Virus record (IMG/VR): IMGVR_UViG_3300020188_000808
Span: 62,001 to 126,000 of that record
DNA length: 64,000 bases
Direction: 5' to 3' (one strand)
This document shows, piece after piece, positions 44,539 through 54,408 of this stretch. How positions within the stretch are numbered: the stretch's first letter is position 1; every line of letters begins with the position of its first letter. The position numbers and the translations under genes were made by a program. Below the pieces are notes generated by a model. The model saw only the letters and a program-made list of their open reading frames with translations. It was not told the DNA's origin and did no database searches.

Positions 44539-45405
44539 ATGCCAGAAATAGAAAGAAGTGGAGCGAATCCACTACAAAAATATTTTAGGCAACCTAAAAT
44601 ATATATCAAATTACCCAGTGGTGGACAATTTTACCCTGAGGGAGCATTAGAACTAACAGAAAACGGTGAGTTGCCTGTTTATGCAATGACAGCAAGAGAT
44701 GAATTATCATTCAAAACTCCTGATGCATTACTTAACGGACAATCAACTGTTGATGTAATTCAAAGTTGCATTCCTAACATTAAGAATGCCTGGGCAATGC
44801 CTACTGTTGATATTGATACAGTACTGGTTGCTATTAGAATTGCTACCTACGGTGAAAAATTAGACCTAACAACTAGAGTTCCAAACACACAAGGGTTAGA
44901 AAGATCATTTGGTCTTGACCTAAGAATGGTGTTAGACAAATTTGCGGCTGTAGAGTTTAATGACACTATCACTATTGACGAGTTTACAATTAAATTGCGT
45001 CCTCAAACTTATAAAGAGTTTACTAGAGTTGCAACAAAAACATTTGAAGAACAACGTATTGCACAAGTAATCCAAGAAGACGATATGGATGAACAAAAGA
45101 AACTAGAAATCTTTAATACTGCATTTGAACGTTTAACTGCTATTACTATTGATATGGTTATTGATGGAGTAGTGTCTGTTCAAGTTGGTGACGATGTAGT
45201 AACTGATAGAAATCATATTGTTCAGTTTATTCAAAACGCAGATAAAAAGTTTTATGCTGGCGTTGTTGAAAATATGGAAACACAAAAAAATAAGTTTAGT
45301 TTAAAACCTATTGAAATTGAATCCACTGAAGAAGAAATTGCGGCAGGTGCTCCTAAAAAATGGGACATGCCTGTAACATTTGATCAATCAAATTTTTTCG
45401 CATAA
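44539..45405 (+). CDS. gp26: Baseplate hub assembly protein / tail chaperone, gp26-like
   Basis: 288 aa. MTARDELSFKTPDALLNG...DIDTVLVAIRIATYGE. Ends NFFA. Confidence 0.8.
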   Translation: MPEIERSGANPLQKYFRQPKIYIKLPSGGQFYPEGALELTENGELPVYAMTARDELSFKTPDALLNGQSTVDVIQSCIPNIKNAWAMPTVDIDTVLVAIRIATYGEKLDLTTRVPNTQGLERSFGLDLRMVLDKFAAVEFNDTITIDEFTIKLRPQTYKEFTRVATKTFEEQRIAQVIQEDDMDEQKKLEIFNTAFERLTAITIDMVIDGVVSVQVGDDVVTDRNHIVQFIQNADKKFYAGVVENMETQKNKFSLKPIEIESTEEEIAAGAPKKWDMPVTFDQSNFFA

Positions 45406-45435
45406 GGATAGCTTCTCAGTCTCTGGAGGATATCC
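45393..45435 (+). other. Predicted -1 ribosomal frameshift signal
   Basis: In-frame T TTT TTC heptamer (45393-45399), 6-nt spacer, ~12-bp hairpin GGATA...TATCC (45406-45435). Confidence 0.65.
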
Positions 45436-45629
45436 TAAAAGAAGTTGACAACTTAGAAAACGAGACCAAAAATTTCAAGATGGAACTATCTCGTATAGTT
45501 TGGTATATGAGAGGTAGCGTTAGTCTTGAGGAGATCTATCAGGTTGGTCCCGAAGATAGAGAAATATTTTCTAAACTTATTAAAGAGAATCTTGAAACTG
45601 CTAAGAAAACTGGTCAACCTTTTTGGTAG
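45399..45629 (+). CDS. gp51-like ORF in the -1 frame (frameshift extension of gp26-like gene)
   Basis: Open 45384-45629 with no ATG until 45480. RIRIASQSLEDILKEVD...WYMRGSVSLEEIY...PFW*. Confidence 0.6.
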   Translation, partial: RIRIASQSLEDILKEVDNLENETKNFKMELSRIVWYMRGSVSLEEIYQVGPEDREIFSKLIKENLETAKKTGQPFW

Positions 45630-45635
45630 GATCTA

Positions 45636-47792
45636 TTACTTTGCTATTAACATTTGACGTACTTGTTTTTGTACGCCTGCTTTACTAATTCTATCTACTA
45701 GATCTGGTAAGTTAACTCCGCTACTCTGTTGTGCAGTTCCTCCACCTAAACTTTGTTTAACACTATCAACATTTACACCAGACTTTTTAATTTTTTGTGC
45801 TAGTGTTGCAACATTGCTTTGTGTTGGTGTAGCTTGTGCTGATCCTTGTTTAGCTTGTGCTTTAGCTTGTGCTGAAGCTGGAACTTTTGGTTTCTTTGCA
45901 TAATCTCCGCCTGTTGCTTTTGCTGGTTTATCTGGAGTACCTGTAGGATAACTTAGGGGAGTTTTGCCCGGAGTAGGTGAGCTAGATGGCTCTTGTTTGT
46001 CATTTTTAGTTGATGCTTGTGCTTGTGTAGCTGTAGCTTTATCACCGCTTGTTGACGCTGTATCTGCGTCTGTGGCACCATCTGTAGGTGCTTTAGTTAC
46101 TTCATCTGGACTAATTGGTGCTTGTGTTGATCCTGCAATACTGCTTATCTGATCATTAGTTAACCCTGCACCTGATAATATATTTACAATGCTACCAGAA
46201 TCAGTTGGTTCGCCCATCTTCTTCCAATCTTTATTAAGTTTGTTAGCAGTAACTTTATTACCTACATCTTTGGCACCTTGCTTAACTGCACCAACTGCAC
46301 TTTTAGCACCTTGAGCAACTGCACCTGCGGCTCTACTTGCAACTTTGCCTACACCACGTTTTAGTTTAGCACCAAGTGTGTTAGGATTGTTTAATGGTAG
46401 TTCACCTTGTGCAGGTTCTGCTTCTTGTAAGTATTCGTTAAATGCAGTTTCATAATCAATTGATTCTGCTTTGTCGCCTACTGCTCCAAAGTCTGAAAGT
46501 TTTTGACTCTTGTCAAAGTTTTTATCTACAGGTGTTGCATCACTTCCGCCTTTAAGATCTAATTCAAGTTGTTTCTTTTCTTCTGGATCAATTGGTTTGA
46601 CTTTGTGCATTTCTTTGTTGTTGTCGTCAACAGTTTGTAGAGCACCTTGTGCCGCCGCACCAATTGCGCCACCGGCGCCACTTAATGTTTCAATTGCTTT
46701 GTCAGCATTGTCAAGCACAGCAATAGCCGCATCCAGTTGATCACCTGTTAGTGCATCTTTAGGAATGTCTGCTATAGTTTTTGCAAGTGCAGTTAGGTCT
46801 GCGTTTGCTTGTTGTGTTGTTGACATAAATCCGTGCAACTTACCTGCCGCTTCGTAATATTCAGGACTAAAAACTTTTGCATTTGATGCCGCATCTGATA
46901 GTGCTTTATATTGTGCAACTTGATCAGCAGTCATAGTTAAATCATAATTGTAAAAGAAGCCGTTGATGTTACCAGACATTTTTAAATTACGTGCACCGTC
47001 AAGTACACCTGCATCAAAACCTGCATCTGCTACTGCACCATCTACTGCCGCAGTAAAGTTGGCTTTTTCAAAAGCATCCATCATAGCGTCTGCTTCTGCT
47101 TCACTGCCCGTTGCAATGTTATCGACCATATTATCAGTTAGCCCTTGAATTGCCAAACCAGCAAGAGCACCATATGCCGCTGTTTTAACTGACTTACCAA
47201 CTGCTGTTGAAAGTTTTTCACCTTGTAATAGATCTTTTGTTGAACGCAGTACTAAACCTGCGGCCGCACCACCTAATGGTCCGCCTGCAAAGGCCGCAAC
47301 AGTTGTTAAAATACCAACTGCTAATGAAGCCTTACCTGGATTTGCTTTTGCCCAATCACTGACAGCTTTTACACCTGCAACAATTTTACCGTCACTTGAT
47401 CCAATTTTCTTTTTAAGTTCTTCAAACTTTGCATCAGCATTTTTAATTGGGCCTGCGTTTTGTGCTAGTTTGCCCAGCTCATTAATCTTTGCATCAACTT
47501 TTTTAGCTAGGTCAACGGGTAATTTAGCCGCCGCTCCAACTGCTGAACCTGCTTTACCAAGTGCAGTTTTGTTATCTCCACTGGCCATTGCTGTTTCTTC
47601 AGCGCCTTTGAAGATTGCTTGTATTTGATCTGATGTTAATTCTGCTTCTGCTAGTTTTGCATAAGACTCAACTAGTGGCCAAAGCTCTAATTCAAAGCGT
47701 GTTAGATAATTTTGTTGTGCTTCGTTTAGATCTTGCCAACCCTCGTTTAAAATTGTTTGGGTTTTGCTTGTAATTACTTCGTTGAGTTTCAT
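45636..47792 (-). CDS. Putative internal head/ejection protein
   Basis: 718 aa. N-terminal MKLNEVIT...LNE, Ala/Gly-rich, one hydrophobic hairpin. Confidence 0.55.
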   Translation of the reverse strand: MKLNEVITSKTQTILNEGWQDLNEAQQNYLTRFELELWPLVESYAKLAEAELTSDQIQAIFKGAEETAMASGDNKTALGKAGSAVGAAAKLPVDLAKKVDAKINELGKLAQNAGPIKNADAKFEELKKKIGSSDGKIVAGVKAVSDWAKANPGKASLAVGILTTVAAFAGGPLGGAAAGLVLRSTKDLLQGEKLSTAVGKSVKTAAYGALAGLAIQGLTDNMVDNIATGSEAEADAMMDAFEKANFTAAVDGAVADAGFDAGVLDGARNLKMSGNINGFFYNYDLTMTADQVAQYKALSDAASNAKVFSPEYYEAAGKLHGFMSTTQQANADLTALAKTIADIPKDALTGDQLDAAIAVLDNADKAIETLSGAGGAIGAAAQGALQTVDDNNKEMHKVKPIDPEEKKQLELDLKGGSDATPVDKNFDKSQKLSDFGAVGDKAESIDYETAFNEYLQEAEPAQGELPLNNPNTLGAKLKRGVGKVASRAAGAVAQGAKSAVGAVKQGAKDVGNKVTANKLNKDWKKMGEPTDSGSIVNILSGAGLTNDQISSIAGSTQAPISPDEVTKAPTDGATDADTASTSGDKATATQAQASTKNDKQEPSSSPTPGKTPLSYPTGTPDKPAKATGGDYAKKPKVPASAQAKAQAKQGSAQATPTQSNVATLAQKIKKSGVNVDSVKQSLGGGTAQQSSGVNLPDLVDRISKAGVQKQVRQMLIAK

Positions 47793-47802
47793 CAGTCAGT
47801 CC

Positions 47803-48318
47803 TTAGAGTAGTTTTGCTAATTCTGCTTTGTCCTGAGGACTAAGTGCATCAATTTCTTTTTGTAAATCTGCAGGAATTCCTCCTTGGGCACTTGCTGATC
47901 CAAATTTATCACCTAAACTAGCTGGACTACTTGCAGTTGCCGCTTGTCCTGCCGCACCTTTGAAAGAATCTTGTGCAATTCCTTGTAACAAATCGTCTAC
48001 TTGTTTAGGAGTCATTTGTCCTTGTACACCTTGCATACGCTTTGTTGGAAGTTTTTGTTTTTGTAAAAAGTCCATAACTTGATCTGCTGTTGGTTGTTTA
48101 GCATTACCACCAGTTTGACCCATATAGCCTCTATATTGTGTGAATATCTCTTTTGCTCTGGCGTTTTGATCTACTTTACCTGACATGCCAGCCGCTGTGC
48201 CTTTAGCGCCAACGGCGCCCGCTACTTTTGCGCCAGCTTTTCTTGCTAGGTTACCTAGGGCACTTCCGCCAGGAGCCTCAGAGACTGTTGTTTCTGTAAC
48301 TATTTGATTGATTTTCAT
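47803..48318 (-). CDS. Putative internal head protein
   Basis: 171 aa. N-terminal MKINQIVTE. Shares modules with 45636..47792. Late promoter at 48340-48346. Confidence 0.55.
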   Translation of the reverse strand: MKINQIVTETTVSEAPGGSALGNLARKAGAKVAGAVGAKGTAAGMSGKVDQNARAKEIFTQYRGYMGQTGGNAKQPTADQVMDFLQKQKLPTKRMQGVQGQMTPKQVDDLLQGIAQDSFKGAAGQAATASSPASLGDKFGSASAQGGIPADLQKEIDALSPQDKAELAKLL

Positions 48319-48382: not shown

Positions 48383-48565
48383 ATGGTTATACGTTATGTT
48401 ATATCGTCTAACGGCGAAGTAGTTGCAACACTTAATAGTATGGATGAAGCAACACAAGCCGTTGAGATGTTTAAACTTCAATCTCCTCATAATACATTCG
48501 AAATCGATACTATCAATGTTAGTCTTGTAAAGTCTGGTTTTGGAAGAGATCCTGATCTACACTAA
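48383..48565 (+). CDS. Small hypothetical protein
   Basis: 60 aa, with TTAAATA at 48370-48376 upstream. Confidence 0.5.
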   Translation: MVIRYVISSNGEVVATLNSMDEATQAVEMFKLQSPHNTFEIDTINVSLVKSGFGRDPDLH

Positions 48566-48574
48566 ATAATCCAC

Positions 48575-48646
48575 ATGTGTTCGCCTATATTTTACTTTGT
48601 GATTTTGACTATTGTGTTATTATGGATACTCTATAAACATAATTAG
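48575..48646 (+). CDS. Possible 23-aa membrane peptide
   Basis: MCSPIFYFVILTIVLLWILYKHN*. CTAAATA at 48562-48568, hairpin plus T-tract at 48648-48675. Confidence 0.3.
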   Translation: MCSPIFYFVILTIVLLWILYKHN

Positions 48647-48734
48647 GAACAAGTACTGCGTACTTGTTGTTTTTCGCTATCGCTCAAACACTTATATCTT
48701 TTAATCTTAATAAGGAATAATTATACTTAATAAT

Positions 48735-49100
48735 AAGTGCGAAGCACTTTAGCATTATCTAGATAGTTGAGCCACAATTCGCCCGTTGCCGGACGAATTA
48801 AAAAAAATGACTACTCCTACATTATCTGAGTGAGCATCGCCACAATCTATTAAAGAAGATTGTAATATAATTACACGGAGGCGGCGTACCGCATACCCCC
48901 TACTTCAGCATTCGCATAATACGCGGAAAGCAGTTAATCCCTAATAGTCGAAATTACTTACTTTGTGGTTGTATCTTTTTCACAGAGCCACGATCTTTTA
49001 TACCTAAGTTAGTATTGTCCTTGCAACGCACTAGTCCACCGGTGTATTTCTCACAAGTTCAAAGTGAGTCGAGCTACCTCGACCAAACAATGTTGCTATG
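48735..49100 (-). ncRNA. Candidate ~370-nt multi-hairpin structured RNA downstream of GIY-YIG gene
   Basis: At least 7 stems, including a 10-bp stem with GCAA loop and a G-U pair (48776-48799) and GCGG-UACG-CCGC (48881-48892). No ORF of 60 aa or more. Confidence 0.6.
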
Positions 49101-49105
49101 TTTGC

Positions 49106-49528
49106 CTATAATTTGCGTAATTCTTCTTTAAGAATCTTTGATCCGCCAACTCTAACATTAATGATTCCGTTGTAGTAATCATCTGTTTCAAGTACTCTGC
49201 GTTCAAACTGCTCTCGTGCCTCTAAGTAACTTGCTAAGCCTCTGCTTTTACAATAATATAATATTTCTCTGGTGAAATTTTTCTGGCCTAATTCTTCAAC
49301 GTCTCTTAATAAGTTATCACTGGAGCCCCAATAGTCTCTCCAATCTGATTCTTTAGTTCCACGTCTTTTGTTTTTTCTGCCTTTGAGCGGTGGCTTAGTT
49401 GTCTTAAACTTAGCTAATTTTTTGCCTATGTACTTACGATTGTTAGTTTTATTAGTGATTAAGTAAACAAATGCTTCGCAATCTGTTGGAAGTTCGTCTA
49501 TTTTTTTACTTTTGTAAGTCCACTGCAT
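49106..49528 (-). CDS. GIY-YIG family nuclease (stand-alone catalytic domain)
   Basis: 140 aa. AFVYLITNKTNNRKYIG, YWGSS, LEAREQ, YYNG. Confidence 0.85.
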   Translation of the reverse strand: MQWTYKSKKIDELPTDCEAFVYLITNKTNNRKYIGKKLAKFKTTKPPLKGRKNKRRGTKESDWRDYWGSSDNLLRDVEELGQKNFTREILYYCKSRGLASYLEAREQFERRVLETDDYYNGIINVRVGGSKILKEELRKL

Positions 49529-49556
49529 GAACTTACTTACATTGTGTCTAGGGGTA

Positions 49557-49760
49557 TTACTCTTGATTGTGGTTCTTCTTGTTAGATGTAAAGTCGTCCA
49601 TGATTTCTACTCTGCGTGTAGAGCACAAACGACGAATTTCGCTTAACCACCTACGTGCTTCACGTTTAGTACGTTCGCTTTTGCGAATTTCAAACGCTTC
49701 ATTGGCTTTATAGTATTGCATATAAGCCTTAGTAAGTAAATCATGCGTATCGTCAGTCAT
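49557..49760 (-). CDS. Small hypothetical helical protein
   Basis: 67 aa, translationally coupled to gp46. Confidence 0.65.
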   Translation of the reverse strand: MTDDTHDLLTKAYMQYYKANEAFEIRKSERTKREARRWLSEIRRLCSTRRVEIMDDFTSNKKNHNQE

Positions 49761-51529
49761 TATCGTATTTCTATATCGTTATCATAACTAGTAAAGCCAT
49801 TTTCCTTAACAACTCTAAGTACATTTGTAACTCTACCAATTAGTTCATCTTTGTGTGAGATTAGATAAACGTTTTTACTACGCTCTCTAGCCATTTTCTT
49901 AAGAATACTAATAGAGCTTTCAACACCTGCGGTATCCATACCACTATCAATAAGCTCATCAATGAATAGTAAGTTAATGTTTTGATATAAACTTTCCCAC
50001 ACATCACGGAATGACCAACTCATACCAAGTATAAGTCTGTTACGTTCACCTCTACTCAAGTTATCAAAGTCTAAGTCCTGTCCTAGTTGTTGTATTTCAA
50101 CTGTTAGGTCATTTTTAAACACTACAGTATGTGGTAACCCTATTTTGTCTAAGTAATATGTAAGTCTGTTGTTTAAGTATGCTAAGTTTTGTTCAATAAT
50201 CTTCTTACGAATAAAACTATCTTTGTTTGTTAGTAACTTATATAAAAAGTCTTGATGTTCTTTAGTACTAGTCAATTCATTTACTGTTTCCCAGTTAAGT
50301 TCTTGAATAGCAGTTTCTTTTAAATCATCAATTTGTTCTTGGTAAGGGTCAACTTCATCTTGTTTTGCCTGCAACGTAAGTTTCAAATTTTCAACATTAT
50401 GTTGATGCTCATATGCTTCTTTGGCATTTTCGTAAAATGTGTTAGGCTTACTTTCAACGTCACCAAGGTCTTCAATCTTTTTAACTACCTTTTCAAACTT
50501 TTCAGCAATCTCAATTAGGTATGTGTGTGCATCGCCATAATCGGTTTGCAGTTTATCTTTAAGTTCTTCTAATTTTTCATCATGTAAGTCTTGTCCACAA
50601 GCATAACACTTTGCATGTTCTAAGTCATCTAGTTCTTTACCAGACTTTTTCATGTTCTTGTCAGCTTGTTCTAAAGCACGTTCAATAGTAGCTCGTTCTT
50701 TGATCAAGTTATTGTGTTTAGTTGTTTTCTCTGACCAAGAACTTAACAAGTCATGTGCTTCTAGTTCAGCATCAATATCTAACTTTTCTAATTCTTTAAT
50801 TGCTTTGGCAAGTTTATCACAGTCTTGTTTGTTTTGAGAGATCCATGCTTTACGTCTAGTGTGCAATCTATCAATATTTTCTGTAATTTTTTCGTTACTT
50901 GCTGTTACTGCCGTGAGTCTAGCAGTTTCTTCTGTGAGTTGGTCCTTAACAATCTTAGATTGCTCTCTAAGTTTATCAGCCTTCTCACTTAATATAGTAA
51001 TACCTAATAGTTGTTCAATGATTGCACGTTGATCGTTGCTTTTTAAAGATAAAAACGGTTCAGTATATGTGTTAAGTGCAAGAATATGTTTGAACATCTC
51101 ATGACTCATACCAAGTAGTGTGTTAATATCTTCTTGTGTCTTGCGACTATCACCTTGACTTTCGTCTGTAATCTCTTGATCAGTACCATCAATGCTAAAT
51201 TTTAACAAATTAGGCTTACGTCCACGTTCAATATGATAATTTCTACCATCTTTTTCAAACGTGAGTGTTACTAACATCGCTTTGTTATTAGTTTTGTTAA
51301 CTAAATTATCTTTGCGTATGTTAGTTAGTGCTTGGCCGTACAGGGCGTAGGATAATGCGTTGATTATCGTAGTTTTACCTGTACCGTTACGGGAACCAGA
51401 ATCGTCACCTCCTTGATCTAAGTTTTCACCAAGCACTAACGTTAGTTGTTCTCTATCAAAGTCAACTCCTTGTGTAGAATTACCTACACTCATGAAATTT
51501 TTGACTGTTAATTCTTTAATTTTAATCAT
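49760..51529 (-). CDS. gp46: Recombination endonuclease ATPase subunit, gp46/SbcC/Rad50-like
   Basis: 589 aa. Walker A NGTGKTT, zinc hook CYAC, signature LSRGE, Walker B LFIDE. Confidence 0.95.
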   Translation of the reverse strand: MIKIKELTVKNFMSVGNSTQGVDFDREQLTLVLGENLDQGGDDSGSRNGTGKTTIINALSYALYGQALTNIRKDNLVNKTNNKAMLVTLTFEKDGRNYHIERGRKPNLLKFSIDGTDQEITDESQGDSRKTQEDINTLLGMSHEMFKHILALNTYTEPFLSLKSNDQRAIIEQLLGITILSEKADKLREQSKIVKDQLTEETARLTAVTASNEKITENIDRLHTRRKAWISQNKQDCDKLAKAIKELEKLDIDAELEAHDLLSSWSEKTTKHNNLIKERATIERALEQADKNMKKSGKELDDLEHAKCYACGQDLHDEKLEELKDKLQTDYGDAHTYLIEIAEKFEKVVKKIEDLGDVESKPNTFYENAKEAYEHQHNVENLKLTLQAKQDEVDPYQEQIDDLKETAIQELNWETVNELTSTKEHQDFLYKLLTNKDSFIRKKIIEQNLAYLNNRLTYYLDKIGLPHTVVFKNDLTVEIQQLGQDLDFDNLSRGERNRLILGMSWSFRDVWESLYQNINLLFIDELIDSGMDTAGVESSISILKKMARERSKNVYLISHKDELIGRVTNVLRVVKENGFTSYDNDIEIR

Positions 51530-52538
51530 CTCTACCTAGATCCCTGTATATGTCTAACAGTTTTTTCCTATCAAAATTGTCTGAGTCAATTGCTTCAATC
51601 TCTTTAGCTACAATTTCATCAACACTTTCAAACTGTGCGATGTCAATTTCACTATTCATCTCGTCATCTTTGGTACTAGGAATTAATGTAATTTCTCTAC
51701 ATTCGTATTCTTTAATAAATGTTTCTTTAATAAAACTTGCTTCTTCGTAACTAATAGGTAAGTCTAGTGTAACTCTCAAATACATCTTGGGTTTAATAAG
51801 TGTATCTTTCTCATCTAGTAGTTGGCTAAGTTTAACTGTGCGATACTTAGGACAGTTCCACCAGTTAATATACTGTGGTTCACCGCCATGTTCTAAAATC
51901 ATCATACCACGCTCGTCATCCCATGCATCTGCATAGTTGTGTGGTAAAGCATTTCCAATATAGTGTACAGGCCCTTTTACTTGTCGCTTGTGAAAGTGTC
52001 CACTAAACACATATTCTTGGTGTTGGAAATGTTCTGCTCTAAGTTCTCCGTGGTCTGGCATCTGTACCATAGCATTCATATAGAAACTAGGCAGTTCAAA
52101 GTGTCCAAATATATACTTGCTTTTAATTTTACTAATCTTTTTCCATTCGTCGCCTACTAACCAAGGAACAAGTGTACTATCACCAATGGTCATTATTTCA
52201 TTAACCATTGTAATGCCTTCAATATGCTTACCAAAAGCAACTGAATTTAAATCTCTTTTATCTTTATAATATAAATCGTGGTTACCAGGAAAGAAATAAA
52301 ACTTTTCAAATGCCTTACCAAGTTTTTCCAATGCTCGAAGCGTAGCATCAAGGGTGGTAATATTCAAACTGTTTCTATTATGATGCCAGTCACCCATAAA
52401 GATGCCAGTCTCACAGCCGTTAGCCTGAGCCTGTTCAATGTACCAATCTACAAATTCTTCGCAGTCGTCATTGTGTGTTTTAGAATTGGACTTGAGTCCA
52501 AAGTGTATGTCTGTAAAGACAGCCGCTTTTTTAAACAA
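51522..52538 (-). CDS. gp47: Recombination endonuclease nuclease subunit, gp47/SbcD/Mre11-like
   Basis: 338 aa. DIHFG, GDWHH, GNHD, GHFE, SGHFH metallophosphoesterase motifs. Confidence 0.95.
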   Translation of the reverse strand: MFKKAAVFTDIHFGLKSNSKTHNDDCEEFVDWYIEQAQANGCETGIFMGDWHHNRNSLNITTLDATLRALEKLGKAFEKFYFFPGNHDLYYKDKRDLNSVAFGKHIEGITMVNEIMTIGDSTLVPWLVGDEWKKISKIKSKYIFGHFELPSFYMNAMVQMPDHGELRAEHFQHQEYVFSGHFHKRQVKGPVHYIGNALPHNYADAWDDERGMMILEHGGEPQYINWWNCPKYRTVKLSQLLDEKDTLIKPKMYLRVTLDLPISYEEASFIKETFIKEYECREITLIPSTKDDEMNSEIDIAQFESVDEIVAKEIEAIDSDNFDRKKLLDIYRDLGRDD

Positions 52539-52593: not shown

Positions 52594-53454
52594 CTATTTT
52601 TTAACGGGTATAGTAGTAACTGTCGAAGACGATGCATACTTTTTATTATGTGCGTCTAATTCGGCTTCCCATTGTCCTTGATTCTGTCTTGTAAAAGATG
52701 GCGTCATGTCGTTCATCTCAAGGATGTCATCTCTTATATTTTGATTACGTTTTTCAATATTAATAATTCTAACAAATGAGTTTGTAACCGCCGCAGTATA
52801 ATAAGCAAATGGATTATTTGATTTTGACTCGTCAAACTGTAAACCAATCTGTGTTAATTGTAGGATTGCCTGTCCTCGCATTTCGTCATTATATGTATAA
52901 CCTCTTACATTACCACGTGTAGCATAACGCTCACATAGCTTCATCCACATCATAGCAAGTTTTCTAGTTGCTTGTCCGCCAGATAAACTAAAATGTCCAT
53001 TCTCCATTCCACCTTCCCAATGACTTTTACCTACAAGCTCTAATTCGTCGTTGTCGTTAAACTTGTAGTGTACAAATGGGGGAAAGTTTAATTTTACCTT
53101 AGTATCTGCTACTGTTTTAGGATTTTTCTTCCTACCTTTTTCTTCTGGAATGTGATCATATGTCATAACACGGAAAATTAGGTCTGTTTTAGCTATTTTT
53201 CGGTAGTCTATTTCAGTATCAGCTTGTTTGACCTTTTCACCAGCCAGCTTTCTTCGAGTATATTCGTCATAACTGATTCGTTTTGCTTGGTTTCTTTTAG
53301 CTTCTGCTATAGTTCTAATATTAATTTTTGCAACATCAGGTAAAATGATGTCAAATTGTGCATAAGCGTCATCTGTAAAACTGCTAAATGTACTTTTAGA
53401 TTTGTGTATTTCTAATAACAAATCTCTGTTGTTTAAATAATTTACTTTTCTCAT
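52594..53454 (-). CDS. gp55: Late-transcription sigma factor, gp55-like
   Basis: 286 aa. YLNNRDLL, NVRGYTYNDEMRGQAIL, FDESKSNNPFAYYT...NSFVRIINIEKRNQ. Confidence 0.88.
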   Translation of the reverse strand: MRKVNYLNNRDLLLEIHKSKSTFSSFTDDAYAQFDIILPDVAKINIRTIAEAKRNQAKRISYDEYTRRKLAGEKVKQADTEIDYRKIAKTDLIFRVMTYDHIPEEKGRKKNPKTVADTKVKLNFPPFVHYKFNDNDELELVGKSHWEGGMENGHFSLSGGQATRKLAMMWMKLCERYATRGNVRGYTYNDEMRGQAILQLTQIGLQFDESKSNNPFAYYTAAVTNSFVRIINIEKRNQNIRDDILEMNDMTPSFTRQNQGQWEAELDAHNKKYASSSTVTTIPVKK

Positions 53455-53535: not shown

Positions 53536-54408
53536 ATGTCAATAGATTTTGCGAAAATAGGAAACAACATCAAAAGTGGTGTCCAAGATGCTACCGCTGA
53601 TTTCACTAAGGGAGTAGCCGACGCGGCAAATGCTATTTCAGAATTTGTCAACGTTGACGGCTTTGCAAAAGCTCTTCGTGGTAAAAATTTACCAGGAAAA
53701 GACAAAGGCCCATTAGGAAATATGGACGGCAACGTTTCGTTTGCCAAACCAACCAACCGTGATTGGCGTGTTAAATTAAGTATGCCTAATCTTGAGTCTT
53801 TCAATAAATCTCCGTTATTGCAACCACTTGCTAAAACAAATGGTTTAGTTTTTCCGTATACGCCTACAATTATTGTAGCACACTCGGCAAACTATAGTGC
53901 AATTACTCCTACACATACTAATTATCCGTATTATGCGTATCAAAACTCACAAGTGGATCAGTTGGTTATCACAGGTGACTTTTTTGTACAAAACGGAATT
54001 GAAGCAAAATATTGGGTTGCGGCATTACACTATCTACGTTCAGTGACTAAAATGTTTTATGGCGGCGAAGGAGATACACTAGGTGCTCCACCTCCAGTTA
54101 TTAAATTAAACGGATACGGAGATTTTATTTTTAACAATGTCCCTTGTGTTGTTACTAACTTCACAGTTGATTTACCACAAGACGTTGATTATATTGCAAC
54201 AGGATTGAATACACCAATTACAACAAAGTCAGATCAAGAAACTGATAAAACTCCAGAGAGTACTAGAGACGGAGTAAGTTGGGCACCAACACAAAGTTTA
54301 ATAACAGTTACAGTACAACCAATTTACAGTAGGCGCGAGATTGAACAGTTTAGTTTACAAAAATATGTCAATGGCGACTATGTTAAAAGTGGTGGAGGAT
54401 TTATTTAA
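53536..54408 (+). CDS. Tail tube initiator/cap-like protein (gp48/gp54 class)
   Basis: 290 aa. FPYTPTI...GAPPPVIKLNGYG...NVPCVVTNFTVDLP. Confidence 0.65.
   Translation: MSIDFAKIGNNIKSGVQDATADFTKGVADAANAISEFVNVDGFAKALRGKNLPGKDKGPLGNMDGNVSFAKPTNRDWRVKLSMPNLESFNKSPLLQPLAKTNGLVFPYTPTIIVAHSANYSAITPTHTNYPYYAYQNSQVDQLVITGDFFVQNGIEAKYWVAALHYLRSVTKMFYGGEGDTLGAPPPVIKLNGYGDFIFNNVPCVVTNFTVDLPQDVDYIATGLNTPITTKSDQETDKTPESTRDGVSWAPTQSLITVTVQPIYSRREIEQFSLQKYVNGDYVKSGGGFI

What the first reader, a model, noticed from the sequence alone, without database searches (positions are those of the whole stretch)
48735..49528. Stand-alone GIY-YIG nuclease followed immediately by a ~370-nt ornate RNA-like element
Seen: right after the stop, the minus strand is non-coding but densely paired: GUCGAG-GUAG-CUCGAC (49068-49083), CUCAC/GUGAG, GUGG/CCAC (48965-48991), GGGG…GCGG-UACG-CCGC…CUCC (48877-48900), ACAAUCU/AGAUUGU (48842-48863), a 10-bp stem with GCAA tetraloop and G-U pair (48776-48799), AAGUGC/GCACUU (48735-48749), and a duplicated motif AUUGUG…GCUCA…AGAUAAUG. 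The nuclease (140 aa) has no recognisable C-terminal DNA-binding domain. Known: HEARO/omega RNAs partner HNH (IscB) nucleases, and large ornate RNAs (ROOL, GOLLD) occur in phages. Inference: a nuclease-RNA pair, possibly a ribonucleoprotein in which RNA supplies specificity, at the end of the gp47-gp46 recombination operon. Alternatives are an independent large ncRNA or a replication origin.
Basis: partly seen in the sequence, partly recalled or inferred. Interest (0 to 1): 0.82.

Follow-up and report, generated by a model that had tools for sequence, protein, structure and literature searches.

The report
New structured RNA after phage nuclease gene
Right after a small nuclease gene, this uncultured marine T4-like phage and several hundred related phage contigs carry a large, intricately folded RNA that matches no known RNA family, but the evidence does not show that the RNA guides that nuclease.

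Summary
Window 49106-49528 (-) encodes a 140-aa SegE-type GIY-YIG nuclease that is only a catalytic domain. The ~370 nt after its stop (49105-48735, -) are non-coding and form a conserved multi-helix RNA.

- **Spread:** more than 250 loci from uncultured marine T4-like phages carry it.
- **Covariation:** 12 helices (68 pairs) are 92% paired, with 39 compensatory pairs against 7-14 in slid controls.
- **Strand:** the G-U bias picks the nuclease-sense strand.
- **No match** in Rfam 15, ARAGORN or 50,697 deposited phage genomes.
two (CUCAC/GUGAG, ACAAUCU/AGAUUGU) are not conserved.
- **Duplicated motif:** real. Two ~25-nt units change in concert at seven positions.

The proposed GIY-YIG/RNA ribonucleoprotein is not supported as stated. 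Homologues 76-78% identical occur without the RNA in at least four lineages, typically after nrdB. The same RNA follows an unrelated PD-(D/E)XK nuclease in at least 21 loci. Yet the RNA was never seen without a small nuclease gene directly upstream.

Best reading: a new large structured ncRNA that forms the 3' end of the gp47-gp46-(orf67)-nuclease operon. Its twin units bind a partner that is still unidentified.

The parts
51522..52538 (-). gp47-like (SbcD/Mre11-type) subunit, first gene of the operon as read here
   Evidence: 338-aa ORF. In the best tblastn hits the neighbouring feature is annotated as SbcD-like or metallophos.
49760..51529 (-). gp46-like (SbcC/Rad50-type) recombination endonuclease subunit
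   Evidence: 589-aa ORF. It is 49.5% identical over 99% of its length to 'recombination endonuclease subunit' of PA5oct-like phages. It lies upstream of the nuclease in most related loci.
49557..49760 (-). orf67, a small Arg-rich protein conserved with type A and B loci
   Evidence: ORF. tblastn hits at 40-99% identity in the same position. No Pfam or PHROG family. ESM-Atlas look-alike clusters partly carry PF07432 HC1, which is a lead only.
49514..49536 (-). 10-bp hairpin that encloses the nuclease start codon
   Evidence: MFE -10.6 kcal/mol, z -3.72, 0 of 200 shuffles. The GUAAGU...ACUUAC/U arms recur in relatives (printed rows).
49106..49528 (-). Stand-alone SegE-type GIY-YIG nuclease, 140 aa
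   Evidence: PF19835 E 6e-34 over residues 3-123. PHROG 447, E 4e-37. 165 distinct homologues are all 140-151 aa, with invariant GIY, YIG and downstream blocks.
48735..49105 (-).
   Evidence: Non-coding. Conserved in relatives. Covariation. Strand bias. No Rfam hit.
49023..49096 (-). H0 GCAAC/GUUGC (49096-92 / 49027-23). It closes the 5' domain that holds H1, H2 and H3.
   Evidence: 99% paired, 2 of 5 pairs compensatory. Also present in the MFE fold.
49068..49083 (-). H1 hairpin GUCGAG-GUAG-CUCGAC
   Evidence: 100% paired, 2 of 6 pairs compensatory.
49029..49066 (-). H2 CACU/AGUG (49066-63 / 49032-29) around H3 ACUUGUG/CACCGGU (49058-52 / 49044-38)
   Evidence: H2: 92% paired, 4 of 4 compensatory. 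H3: 90% paired, 7 of 7 compensatory.
49000..49015 (-). H4 AUAC/GUAU with the conserved CUAAC loop
   Evidence: 3 of 4 pairs compensatory. Only 78% paired because MAFFT shifts some rows.
48964..48992 (-). H5 GUGG/CCAC with the conserved loop CUCUGUGAAAAAGAUACAA
   Evidence: 92% paired, 4 of 5 compensatory.
48928..48963 (-). H6, an 11-position helix with an internal mismatch
   Evidence: 83% paired, 9 of 11 compensatory.
48855..48906 (-). H8 GAAG/CUUC (48906-03 / 48858-55). It encloses H9 GGGGG/CCUCC (48900-896 / 48881-77), H10 GCGG-UACG-CCGC and the variable hairpin H11.
   Evidence: H8: 100% paired, 4 of 4 compensatory. H9: 100% paired, 2 of 5 compensatory. H10 is conserved but invariant. The type-B equivalent is GUAGGU/ACCUAC, which becomes GCAGGU/ACCUGC in some loci.
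48820..48845 (-). Twin unit M1 (UUGUGGCG...CUCAGAUAAUG)
48776..48799 (-). H13, a strong hairpin with a GCAA loop between the twin units
   Evidence: 99% paired in type A. The stem is fully different but still paired in types B and C (GGAACC/GGUUCC, UUCUCCU/AGGAGAA).
48753..48777 (-). Twin unit M2 (UUGUGGCU...UCUAGAUAAUG)
48735..48749 (-). H14, a UUCG-capped hairpin followed by a weak U-rich tail. Probable 3' end or terminator of the RNA.
   Evidence: 90% paired, 2 of 6 compensatory. Not scored as a terminator by the consensus scan.
48668..48690 (-). Further conserved hairpin: stem UGUUU/AAACA with the 12-nt loop GAGCGAUAGCGA. Possibly still part of the transcript.
   Evidence: 329 occurrences in the fetched loci. 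The stem covaries (UGCUU/AAGCA, AGUUU/AAACU, GUGUU/AACAC).
48648..48668 (.). Hairpin that scores as an intrinsic terminator for the plus-strand small ORF. It may also stop minus-strand transcripts.
48383..48565 (+). Convergent 60-aa ORF with a conserved C-terminus ...GRDPDLH. It marks the far border of the non-coding stretch.
   Evidence: ORF. tblastn homologues in the same place and orientation at 31-100% identity.

Best explanation
The element is a member of an undescribed family of large (about 320-520 nt) structured non-coding RNAs. They are found in a big clade of uncultured marine T4-like phages.

**How it is made (inferred).** It is transcribed on the same strand as the recombination operon gp47-gp46-(orf67)-small nuclease, as the operon's 3' end. 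In the window the first helix starts 10 nt after the nuclease stop codon, and no sigma-70-like promoter lies in between. It ends at a UUCG-capped hairpin, or at the bidirectional terminator about 70-90 nt further on.

**How it folds.**
- A closed 5' domain (H0 to H3).
- Three hairpins with conserved loops (H4 to H6).
- A nested central domain (H8 to H11).
- A 3' module in which two ~25-nt, largely unpaired units (M1 and M2) flank a strong hairpin (H13).

**How it works (inferred).** M1 and M2 stay alike within each genome while they drift between genomes. The most economical reading is that both contact the same phage-encoded partner. The RNA would then act as a stable scaffold or regulator in its own right. 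It is not a guide tailored to the GIY-YIG enzyme, because the upstream nuclease can be GIY-YIG or an unrelated PD-(D/E)XK protein.

**Shown versus inferred.**
- Shown: the RNA-level fold, the functional strand, the family, the linkage pattern and the concerted evolution of the units.
- Inferred: co-transcription, stability as a separate RNA species, and the existence and identity of the partner.
For: - **Family and conservation.** The non-coding stretch is conserved at 70-84% in relatives whose flanking genes differ. It comes in three sequence types, A, B and C, with one architecture.
- **Covariation.** 68 pairs in 12 helices are 92% paired, with 39 pairs carrying double changes. The covariation score is 0.44, against 0.20 in shuffles (0 of 500 reach it) and 0.06-0.11 with slid partners.
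- **Strand.** 151 G-U cells against 30 A-C cells. The window folds at z -2.0 to -2.3 on the minus strand and 0.04 on the plus strand.
- **RNA-type loops.** UUCG, UACG and GNRA tetraloops.
- **Co-transcription.**
  - In the window the first helix (H0) starts 10 nt after the stop, and in the type A relatives within roughly 5-15 nt of it.
  - There is no minus-strand promoter-like site between 48517 and 49900.
  - A few relatives carry an inserted near-consensus promoter (TTGACA-17-TATACT) between the stop and the RNA. This argues that the RNA itself is what must be expressed (rows L057 and L067).
- **Twin units.** The same substitution appears in both copies at seven positions across lineages. 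One motif position shows AA 71, TT 65 and mixed 7.
- **Independence from the nuclease fold.** A PD-(D/E)XK nuclease (PF24608, E 3e-25) precedes type A RNA in L368 and type B RNA in L417. The covariance model hits at least 21 such loci.
- **Nuclease without RNA.**
- **Novelty.** No Rfam hit, no tRNA or tmRNA, no blastn match in 50,697 phage records, and nothing found in the paper library.
Against: - No transcript data exist. The 5' and 3' ends, processing and stability are all inferred.
- The partner of the twin units was not found.
  - No consistent complementary site lies inside the RNA.
  - There is no complementarity to the start regions of neighbouring genes.
- The RNA was never seen without a small nuclease gene directly upstream, in about 260 informative loci. 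This leaves room for a real functional tie to 'a nuclease', which this explanation does not use.
- In type C loci such as L037, gp46 is on the opposite strand, yet the RNA still follows the nuclease. The unit that is kept together is therefore nuclease+RNA rather than gp46+RNA.
- The covariance model R1 has only 9 base pairs and roughly calibrated E-values.
Confidence: 0.5

Rival explanations
1. Nuclease-RNA module. The RNA works physically with whichever small nuclease is encoded just upstream. It could be a targeting or scaffolding RNA, or an inhibitor or immunity RNA that restrains a dangerous enzyme.
For: - The RNA was never found without a small nuclease gene directly upstream: 112 of 112, 116 of 116, and 34 of 34 in the hairpin-anchored set.
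- Adjacency survives insertions elsewhere in the operon (L121, L160, L134, L151). It also survives the inverted-gp46 arrangement of L037.
- Both nucleases are bare catalytic domains.
- The GIY-YIG protein has a conserved Lys/Arg-rich insert between the YIG block and the next block.
- The nuclease tree tracks RNA type: 14 changes against 51-60 when labels are shuffled.
Against: - The GIY-YIG protein occurs at 76-78% identity without the RNA in four or more lineages. More distant relatives, up to 43% identical, are RNA-free in cyanophages and Felix-O1-like phages.
- Two unrelated folds would both need to recognise one RNA, and the twin units look the same behind either nuclease.
- No guide-like variable terminal segment is present.
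- Type C nucleases are as close to the window's enzyme (80-82%) as type A ones (median 76%), although the RNAs differ strongly.
Confidence: 0.2
2. Homing-endonuclease neighbourhood. The RNA gene is a conserved resident gene. The small nucleases are free-standing homing endonuclease genes of two families that sit beside it and cut nuclease-less or differently typed alleles, as T4 SegB does in the tRNA region.
For: - Two unrelated nuclease families occupy the same slot.
- The GIY-YIG gene also occurs at another classic HEG-rich site, after nrdA-nrdB.
- Its start codon is buried in a hairpin. From my own knowledge of the T4 literature, I-TevI and seg genes show the same feature.
- RNA types are mosaic relative to the nuclease tree.
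Against: - No empty site was found. No locus has the RNA or the flanking hairpin without a nuclease gene, among about 260 informative loci.
- The nuclease is among the best conserved proteins of the locus: 72-83% identity where gp46 is 53-80%. All catalytic blocks are intact in 165 distinct proteins.
- It lacks the DNA-binding domain that known Seg enzymes use.
- PD-(D/E)XK homologues sit next to gp46 even in distant phages whose gp46 is 41-68% identical. That looks like a fixed operon member, not a sporadic invader.
Confidence: 0.15
3. Purely cis-acting 3' UTR. The structure acts as terminator, 3' stabiliser or retro-regulator (lambda sib-like) of the operon mRNA, with no function as a separate RNA.
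For: - It starts right after the stop codon and ends in hairpins.
- It sits at a convergent gene junction.
Against: - Twelve or more covarying helices, conserved loops and 320-520 nt are far more than known terminators or sib-type sites need.
- Some relatives give it a promoter of its own.
- The twin units evolve in concert, which points to a trans partner.
Confidence: 0.1
4. DNA-level element. This could be a replication origin with iterons (the twin units), or a single-stranded DNA structure used in replication or packaging.
For: - Two direct repeats that co-evolve resemble iterons.
- An AT-rich 45-nt stretch follows H14.
- The locus belongs to a recombination operon.
Against: - There is no GC-skew inflection here. 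The only switch, near 53.5 kb, follows gene orientation.
- UUCG, UACG and GNRA loops and a 5:1 G-U bias fit RNA.
- Only two repeats are present, with variable spacing.
Confidence: 0.05

Closest known systems
HEARO / omega RNA with IscB, and TnpB omega RNAs (OMEGA systems)
   Same: A large structured RNA lies directly 3' of a nuclease gene on the same strand and is probably cut from the same transcript.
   Different: - The nuclease is GIY-YIG or PD-(D/E)XK, not RuvC/HNH.
- There is no Rfam HEARO match.
- No variable guide segment and no transposon ends are present.
- The nuclease exists without the RNA.
Orphan large ornate bacterial and phage RNAs (GOLLD, ROOL, OLE, raiA)
   Same: - Several hundred nucleotides, many covarying helices, conserved loops and unknown biochemical function.
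- Found in phages and in metagenomes.
   Different: - No sequence or structure match to any of them (Rfam scans).
- Fixed position after a nuclease gene at the end of the gp47-gp46 operon.
- Twin units that evolve in concert.
T4 Seg-type free-standing GIY-YIG homing endonucleases (SegE; SegB in the tRNA cluster)
   Same: - The catalytic domain belongs to the SegE Pfam family.
- T4-like phage context, next to a stable-RNA gene as for SegB, with a start codon buried in a hairpin. The SegB and hairpin parallels are from my own knowledge of T4.
   Different: - No C-terminal DNA-binding domain.
- Not sporadic, and strongly conserved.
- Interchangeable with a PD-(D/E)XK protein.
Group I introns carrying homing endonuclease ORFs (T4 td, nrdB, nrdD)
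   Same: A GIY-YIG ORF lies beside a ribozyme-sized structured RNA in a T4-like phage, and different nuclease families can take the ORF slot.
   Different: - No flanking exons. Stops in all frames and a terminator follow the RNA.
- Only about 28 nt lie between orf67 and the nuclease ORF.
- No Intron_gpI hit.
- No ORF-less form was seen.
Lambdoid nut sites with N protein, and HK022 put RNAs
   Same: Two similar RNA sites in one phage stay alike while they diverge between phages.
   Different: - The units here lie 70 nt apart inside one large fold at the 3' end of an operon, not after promoters.
- No antitermination role has been shown.
- The resemblance is by analogy only.

Membership tests
SegE-type GIY-YIG nuclease domain (Pfam PF19835; PHROG 447) | Profile match over the whole catalytic domain, with GIY and YIG motifs and the downstream conserved blocks | tested here: met
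   PF19835 E 6e-34, residues 3-123 matching profile positions 1-123. PHROG 447 E 4e-37. The blocks are invariant in 165 homologues.
Seg-type homing endonuclease (functional class) | C-terminal DNA-binding domain joined to the catalytic domain | tested here: not met
   140 aa in total, with the domain covering residues 3-123. All homologues are 140-151 aa.
Seg-type homing endonuclease (functional class) | Sporadic presence among related genomes, with empty target sites | tested here: not met
   No RNA-bearing or hairpin-anchored locus lacks a nuclease gene in the slot.
Seg-type homing endonuclease (functional class) | Site-specific cleavage of nuclease-less alleles and co-conversion of flanks | not testable with these tools
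   Needs enzyme assays or mixed infections.
OMEGA-type RNA-guided nuclease (IscB-HEARO, TnpB-omega RNA) | RuvC and/or HNH effector with a cognate omega RNA family | tested here: not met
   The protein is GIY-YIG only. No HEARO or other Rfam hit up to E 10.
OMEGA-type RNA-guided nuclease (IscB-HEARO, TnpB-omega RNA) | Conserved scaffold plus a hypervariable single-stranded guide at one end | tested here: not met
   The variable parts are hairpins (H3, H11, H14, the type-B insert) or the M1-H13 linker. No terminal guide is seen.
OMEGA-type RNA-guided nuclease (IscB-HEARO, TnpB-omega RNA) | Protein and RNA always occur together | tested here: not met
   RNA to nuclease holds always. Nuclease to RNA does not.
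Group I intron with an endonuclease ORF | Conserved P3-P9 core detectable by the Rfam model, and exons that join into a gene | tested here: not met
   No Intron_gpI match. No downstream exon.
tmRNA (including two-piece forms, as in phage Melnitz) | tRNA-like domain plus a tag reading frame | tested here: not met
   ARAGORN finds none in the window or in 24 loci, but does find the Melnitz tmRNA. No Rfam tmRNA hit. No HMM similarity to the first 50 kb of Melnitz, which includes its tmRNA.
Any Rfam 15 family | Covariance-model match at or near the gathering score | tested here: not met
   Window region: nothing inside 48640-49105 up to E 10. Ten relatives: none at E 0.1. Short inputs of type B and type C: only one chance-level hit of 18 bits against a gathering score of 58.
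Type III toxin-antitoxin (ToxIN-like) | Tandem array of antitoxin RNA repeats upstream of an endoribonuclease toxin | tested here: not met
   Only two units, embedded in a larger fold, lie downstream of a DNase-family gene.
Structured non-coding RNA (generic) | Helices kept by compensatory changes beyond phylogeny-preserving controls, with strand-specific G-U pairs | tested here: met

The most novel reading that the evidence does not exclude
The RNA is the constant core of a nuclease-RNA system in which the protein part is exchangeable. It would recruit, aim or restrain whichever bare nuclease domain (GIY-YIG or PD-(D/E)XK) is translated from the same transcript. The twin units would act as paired recognition elements for a nucleic-acid target or a dimeric partner. 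That would be an RNA-centred nuclease system unrelated to CRISPR or OMEGA, in abundant ocean phages. Alternatively, the RNA could itself be a new large ribozyme.
Probability: 0.2. Interest if true: 0.92.

Novelty: new variant of a known kind. Interest (0 to 1): 0.74.

Why it matters
**A rare kind of RNA.** Bacterial and phage RNAs longer than about 300 nt with many covarying helices are rare. From general knowledge of the field, nearly all of those whose function is known are ribozymes or cores of ribonucleoproteins.

**This one is well sampled.**
- It is present in several hundred contigs of uncultured marine T4-like phages.
- It has no relative in Rfam 15 or in 50,697 deposited phage genomes.
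- It shows two unusual regularities:
  - It always follows a small nuclease gene, of either of two unrelated folds.
  - It contains two units that evolve in concert.

**What follows.** The alignment is already deep enough for structure probing, cryo-EM and partner hunting. If the RNA acts with the nucleases, it would be a new way of coupling RNA to DNA cleavage. If it does not, it is a new orphan large RNA tied to phage recombination.

**Annotation.** The work also shows that PHROG 447 proteins annotated as 'NAD synthetase' in many phage records match GIY-YIG nuclease profiles.

Tried and rejected
- **Decayed C-terminal half of a longer Seg protein.** Rejected. Homologues all stop at 140-151 aa, and the downstream region is full of stops in all frames.
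- **tRNA or tmRNA.** None found.
- **Known RNA family.** None.
- **Group I intron.** No exons and no model hit (see the membership test).
- **Phage-wide promoter motif.** The twin motif occurs only here in the 64-kb window.
- **Partner of the twin-unit tails inside the RNA.**
  - Only the window shows a 9-nt complement, with two G-U pairs, in the 5' leader.
  - It is not kept in relatives with other tails, nor in L054, which has the same tail.
- **Antisense control of neighbouring genes.** Own tails pair no better than foreign tails with the start regions of the nuclease, orf67, gp46 or the 171-aa gene.
- **Start-codon or small-ORF reading of the tails.** The triplet at the aligned position is AUG, GUG, UUG or AUA, but the downstream frames are not conserved. 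The window's frame is M-stop.
- **Mutual-information scan of the 3' domain.** It was dominated by alignment shifts. The only clean long-range signal is the identity coupling of M1 and M2.
- **T4 endonuclease II (DenA) orthology.** No PDB sequence hit at E 1. Only the genomic position after nrdB in other phages is similar.
- **RNAalifold on the whole type-B alignment.** It gave a poor consensus, because the core is invariant and the inserts are gappy. I used hand-defined helices checked by counts instead.
- **My regex for type-B cores** was too strict and found only 9 distinct cores.
- **Not used:**
  - the metagenome scan
  - structure prediction of the nuclease
  - The count of structure pairs, whose long dot-bracket input I replaced with equivalent counts and controls in scripts
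Full report
**1. What is at the coordinates**

The minus strand of 49106-49528 is a 140-aa ORF. It matches the Pfam family SegE_GIY-YIG from end to end (E 6e-34, residues 3-123) and PHROG 447. It is therefore a GIY-YIG catalytic domain with nothing attached.

Upstream on the same strand lie an Arg-rich 67-aa ORF, a gp46-like SbcC/Rad50 protein and a gp47-like SbcD/Mre11 protein.

Downstream, 787 nt (49105-48319) have stops in every minus-strand frame. The only ORF inside is a convergent plus-strand 60-aa gene (48383-48565), with its own terminator at 48648-48668.

The minus strand of 48730-49105 folds better than shuffles (z -1.97). The plus strand does not (z 0.04).

**2. The RNA is real**

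*Relatives.*
- Searching IMG/VR with the nuclease gave more than 597 relatives. The 171-aa downstream protein gave 18 syntenic loci.
- The window's non-coding stretch aligns at 70-84% to many of them over exactly the ~375 nt after the stop.
- Alignments show three sequence types with one architecture: A (the window's type), B (the commonest) and C.

*Covariation.*
- I worked with 24 non-redundant type-A sequences (A3). I defined 12 helices in window coordinates and counted pairs.
- Across 68 pairs, 92% of cells pair and 39 pairs show changes on both sides.
- The covariation score is 0.44.
  - Shuffling the partners gives 0.20, and 0 of 500 shuffles reach the observed value.
  - Sliding the partners by 1-3 columns, which keeps phylogeny, gives 0.06-0.11 and only 7-14 double-change pairs.

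*Strand and loops.*
- G-U cells outnumber A-C cells 151 to 30. The strand that matters is therefore the nuclease-sense one.
- Loops are of RNA type: C(UUCG)G, UACG and GNRA.

*Helices that link or extend the types.*
- H13 changes completely between types yet stays paired: UUCGUCCG/CGGGCGAA, GGAACC/GGUUCC, UUCUCCU/AGGAGAA.
- The central helix of type B, GUAGGU/ACCUAC, becomes GCAGGU/ACCUGC in some loci.

CUCAC/GUGAG is 49% paired. ACAAUCU/AGAUUGU is 53% paired and conflicts with H8.

**3. Anatomy in the window (all on the minus strand)**

| Element | Coordinates | Note |
|---|---|---|
| H0 | 49096-92 / 49027-23 | closes the 5' domain |
| H1 | 49083-68 | hairpin |
| H2 | 49066-63 / 49032-29 | encloses H3 |
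| H3 | 49058-52 / 49044-38 | |
| H4 | 49015-00 | CUAAC loop |
| H5 | 48992-64 | 19-nt conserved loop |
| H6 | 48963-28 | internal mismatch |
| H8 | 48906-03 / 48858-55 | encloses H9, H10 and H11 |
| H9, H10 | 48900-48877 | |
| H11 | within H8 | variable hairpin |
| M1 | 48845-20 | twin unit |
| U-rich linker | between M1 and H13 | |
| H13 | 48799-76 | GCAA loop |
| M2 | 48777-53 | twin unit |
| H14 | 48749-35 | UUCG loop |

An AT-rich 45 nt follows H14. Then comes another conserved hairpin whose stem covaries and whose 12-nt loop reads GAGCGNNAGCGA (48690-68). After it lies the hairpin that scores as the plus-strand terminator.

Family members measure 318-518 nt (type B) and 355-449 nt (type A) from the stop codon to about 40 nt past unit M2, a span that includes H14.

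**4. Twin units**

M1 and M2 are about 25 nt each and share their sequence along the whole unit. Between genomes they differ at many positions. Within a genome they carry the same change.

| M1 tail | M2 tail |
|---|---|
| CUCACAUGAUG | UCUACAUGAUG |
| CUCGCAUGAUG | UCUGCAUGAUG |
| CUCAGAUAAUG | UCUAGAUAAUG |
| CUCACGUGAAG | UCUACGUGAAA |
| CUCACAUAAUG | UCUACAUAAUA |
| CUCACAGGAAA | UCUACAGGAAU |

Type C shows AUAUGAU, ACAUGAU, UCGUGAU or ACUUGAU in both copies.

The only clean long-range signal in a mutual-information scan is this identity coupling: AA 71, TT 65, mixed 7.

The window's variant, AGAUAAUG, also arose in the distant locus L054, again in both copies.

I could not find what they pair with or bind:
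- There is no consistent complement inside the RNA.
- There is none in the start regions of neighbouring genes.

**5. Linkage**

*RNA to nuclease.* Three searches that did not use the nuclease were run:
- the type-B core motif
- the type-A M2 pattern
- the downstream GAGCG hairpin

Results:
- A GIY-YIG ORF lay directly upstream in 112 of 112, 116 of 116 and 33 of 34 informative loci.
- The exception, L368, has a PD-(D/E)XK endonuclease in that slot (PF24608, E 3e-25).
- Following that protein, the covariance model R1 finds the RNA module 200-700 nt downstream on the same strand in at least 21 loci. R1 was built from A4 and gives a single hit in the window at 102 bits.
- L368 carries type-A RNA and L417 carries type-B RNA.
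- Nearly all PD-(D/E)XK homologues lie beside gp46, even in distant phages.

*Nuclease to RNA.*
- GIY-YIG homologues 76-78% identical sit after nrdA-nrdB, or in other contexts, with no RNA by R1. These are L047/48/53/73/81, L058, L059 and phage Melnitz.
- More distant members are RNA-free in cyanophage S-ShM2 and in a Felix-O1-like phage.
- The RNA-less nucleases are nested at four or more places in the nuclease tree.

*Rearrangement.* In type-C loci such as L037 the order is baseplate gene, nuclease, RNA, then a 267-aa gene and gp46 on the other strand. The nuclease-RNA adjacency therefore survives a rearrangement of gp46.

**6. What it is not**

- No Rfam 15 family.
- No tRNA or tmRNA, although ARAGORN does find Melnitz's two-piece tmRNA.
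- No similarity in 50,697 deposited phage genomes.
- No description found in the paper library.
- Not an intron: no exons and no model hit.
- No skew inflection that would mark an origin.

**7. Interpretation**

*Shown:* a new RNA family, its fold, its strand, its position and the concerted units.

*Inferred:* it is made by read-through of the operon.
- The first helix starts 10 nt after the stop in the window, and within roughly 5-15 nt in the type A relatives. There is no promoter-like site in between.
- It then acts as a stable RNA whose twin units bind one phage-encoded partner.
- A few relatives have inserted a near-consensus promoter just before it. This suggests that the RNA itself is the product that matters.

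- The RNA is indifferent to the nuclease fold.
- The nuclease lives without the RNA.
- No guide-like segment is present.

*What keeps a functional tie open:* the absolute rule 'RNA only after a small nuclease gene'. I give that reading 0.2.

*Other readings:*
- The homing-endonuclease reading explains the two families in one slot. It does not fit the lack of empty sites or the strong conservation.
- A purely cis-acting 3' UTR and a DNA-level element are the least likely.

**8. Verdict**

The RNA is novel and widespread. Its function is unknown but now directly testable.

Noticed in passing
window 49514-49536 (-): The nuclease start codon sits inside a 10-bp hairpin (GUAAGUUCAU/GUGGACUUAC; -10.6 kcal/mol, z -3.7). 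From my own knowledge of T4, intron and seg endonuclease genes use the same device to delay translation. The weak Rfam 'Lacto-rpoB' hit (E 0.69) is this hairpin.
   Followed up: partly
window 49557-49760 (-); L368:9315-9566 and the ORF after it: orf67 is a small Arg-rich protein (…RKSERTKREARRWLSEIRRLCSTRRVE…) with no Pfam or PHROG family. ESM-Atlas look-alike clusters partly carry the histone-like HC1 domain. It is present in type A and B loci, duplicated in tandem in L368, and not detected in type C loci. It is a candidate nucleic-acid-binding partner.
   Followed up: partly
It abuts the terminator hairpin. The motif served as an independent anchor and occurs once (L351) in an unrelated context.
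   Followed up: partly
window 48383-48565 (+): A lone plus-strand 60-aa ORF sits in a long run of minus-strand genes. It is conserved in relatives in the same place and orientation, with the C-terminus (F/Y)GRDP(D/E)LH. No family was found.
   Followed up: no
L057:3430-3500 and L067:3249-3320; L221, L227, L244, L291 (first ~70 nt after the nuclease stop): Some relatives carry an insertion between the nuclease stop and the RNA. In L057 and L067 it contains a near-consensus sigma-70 promoter (TTGACA-17 nt-TATACT). The L221 group has a different 70-nt insert with a weaker promoter-like sequence.
   Followed up: partly
L342 (Melnitz MZ577097.1) 44781-46436: The cultured relative Melnitz has the GIY-YIG homologue after nrdB with no RNA. 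It also carries a two-piece tmRNA gene two small ORFs downstream of a PDDEXK-superfamily nuclease gene. This is another nuclease gene near a large structured RNA gene.
   Followed up: no
L008, L011, L057, L064 (between gp46 and orf67); L121, L160 (between orf67 and nuclease); L134, L151: Insertions of 0.75-1.9 kb occur at several junctions of the operon in different relatives. I never saw more than about 100 nt between the nuclease stop and the RNA.
   Followed up: partly
L343, L344 (PBPT01000016.1, PBPT01000082.1): The only hits in 185,579 species genomes are two long contigs (335 and 153 kb) of one Candidatus Neomarinimicrobiota MAG from the Red Sea. Both show the phage synteny gp46-orf67-nuclease-RNA-171aa-718aa. 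They are probably phage contigs binned with the MAG, and at best a weak host hint.
   Followed up: partly
GenBank phage records hit (e.g. GU071096.1 163368-163817; NC_042076.1 60031-60531): Members of PHROG 447 are widely annotated as 'NAD synthetase', although they match GIY-YIG nuclease profiles. In cyanophages the gene (T4-GC 213) lies after nrdA-nrdB. From my own knowledge, that is the position of denA in T4.
   Followed up: partly
window 45636-48318 (-): The two genes after the locus (171 and 718 aa) begin with similar N-termini (MKINQIVTE / MKLNEVITS). They are Ala/Gly/Gln-rich, low-complexity and fast-evolving (25-60% identity in relatives). No family was found.
   Followed up: no
window ~53500: GC and AT skew change sign where transcription switches from minus-strand to plus-strand genes (the divergent pair 52594-53454 and 53536-54408). 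This is the only skew inflection in the window.
   Followed up: no
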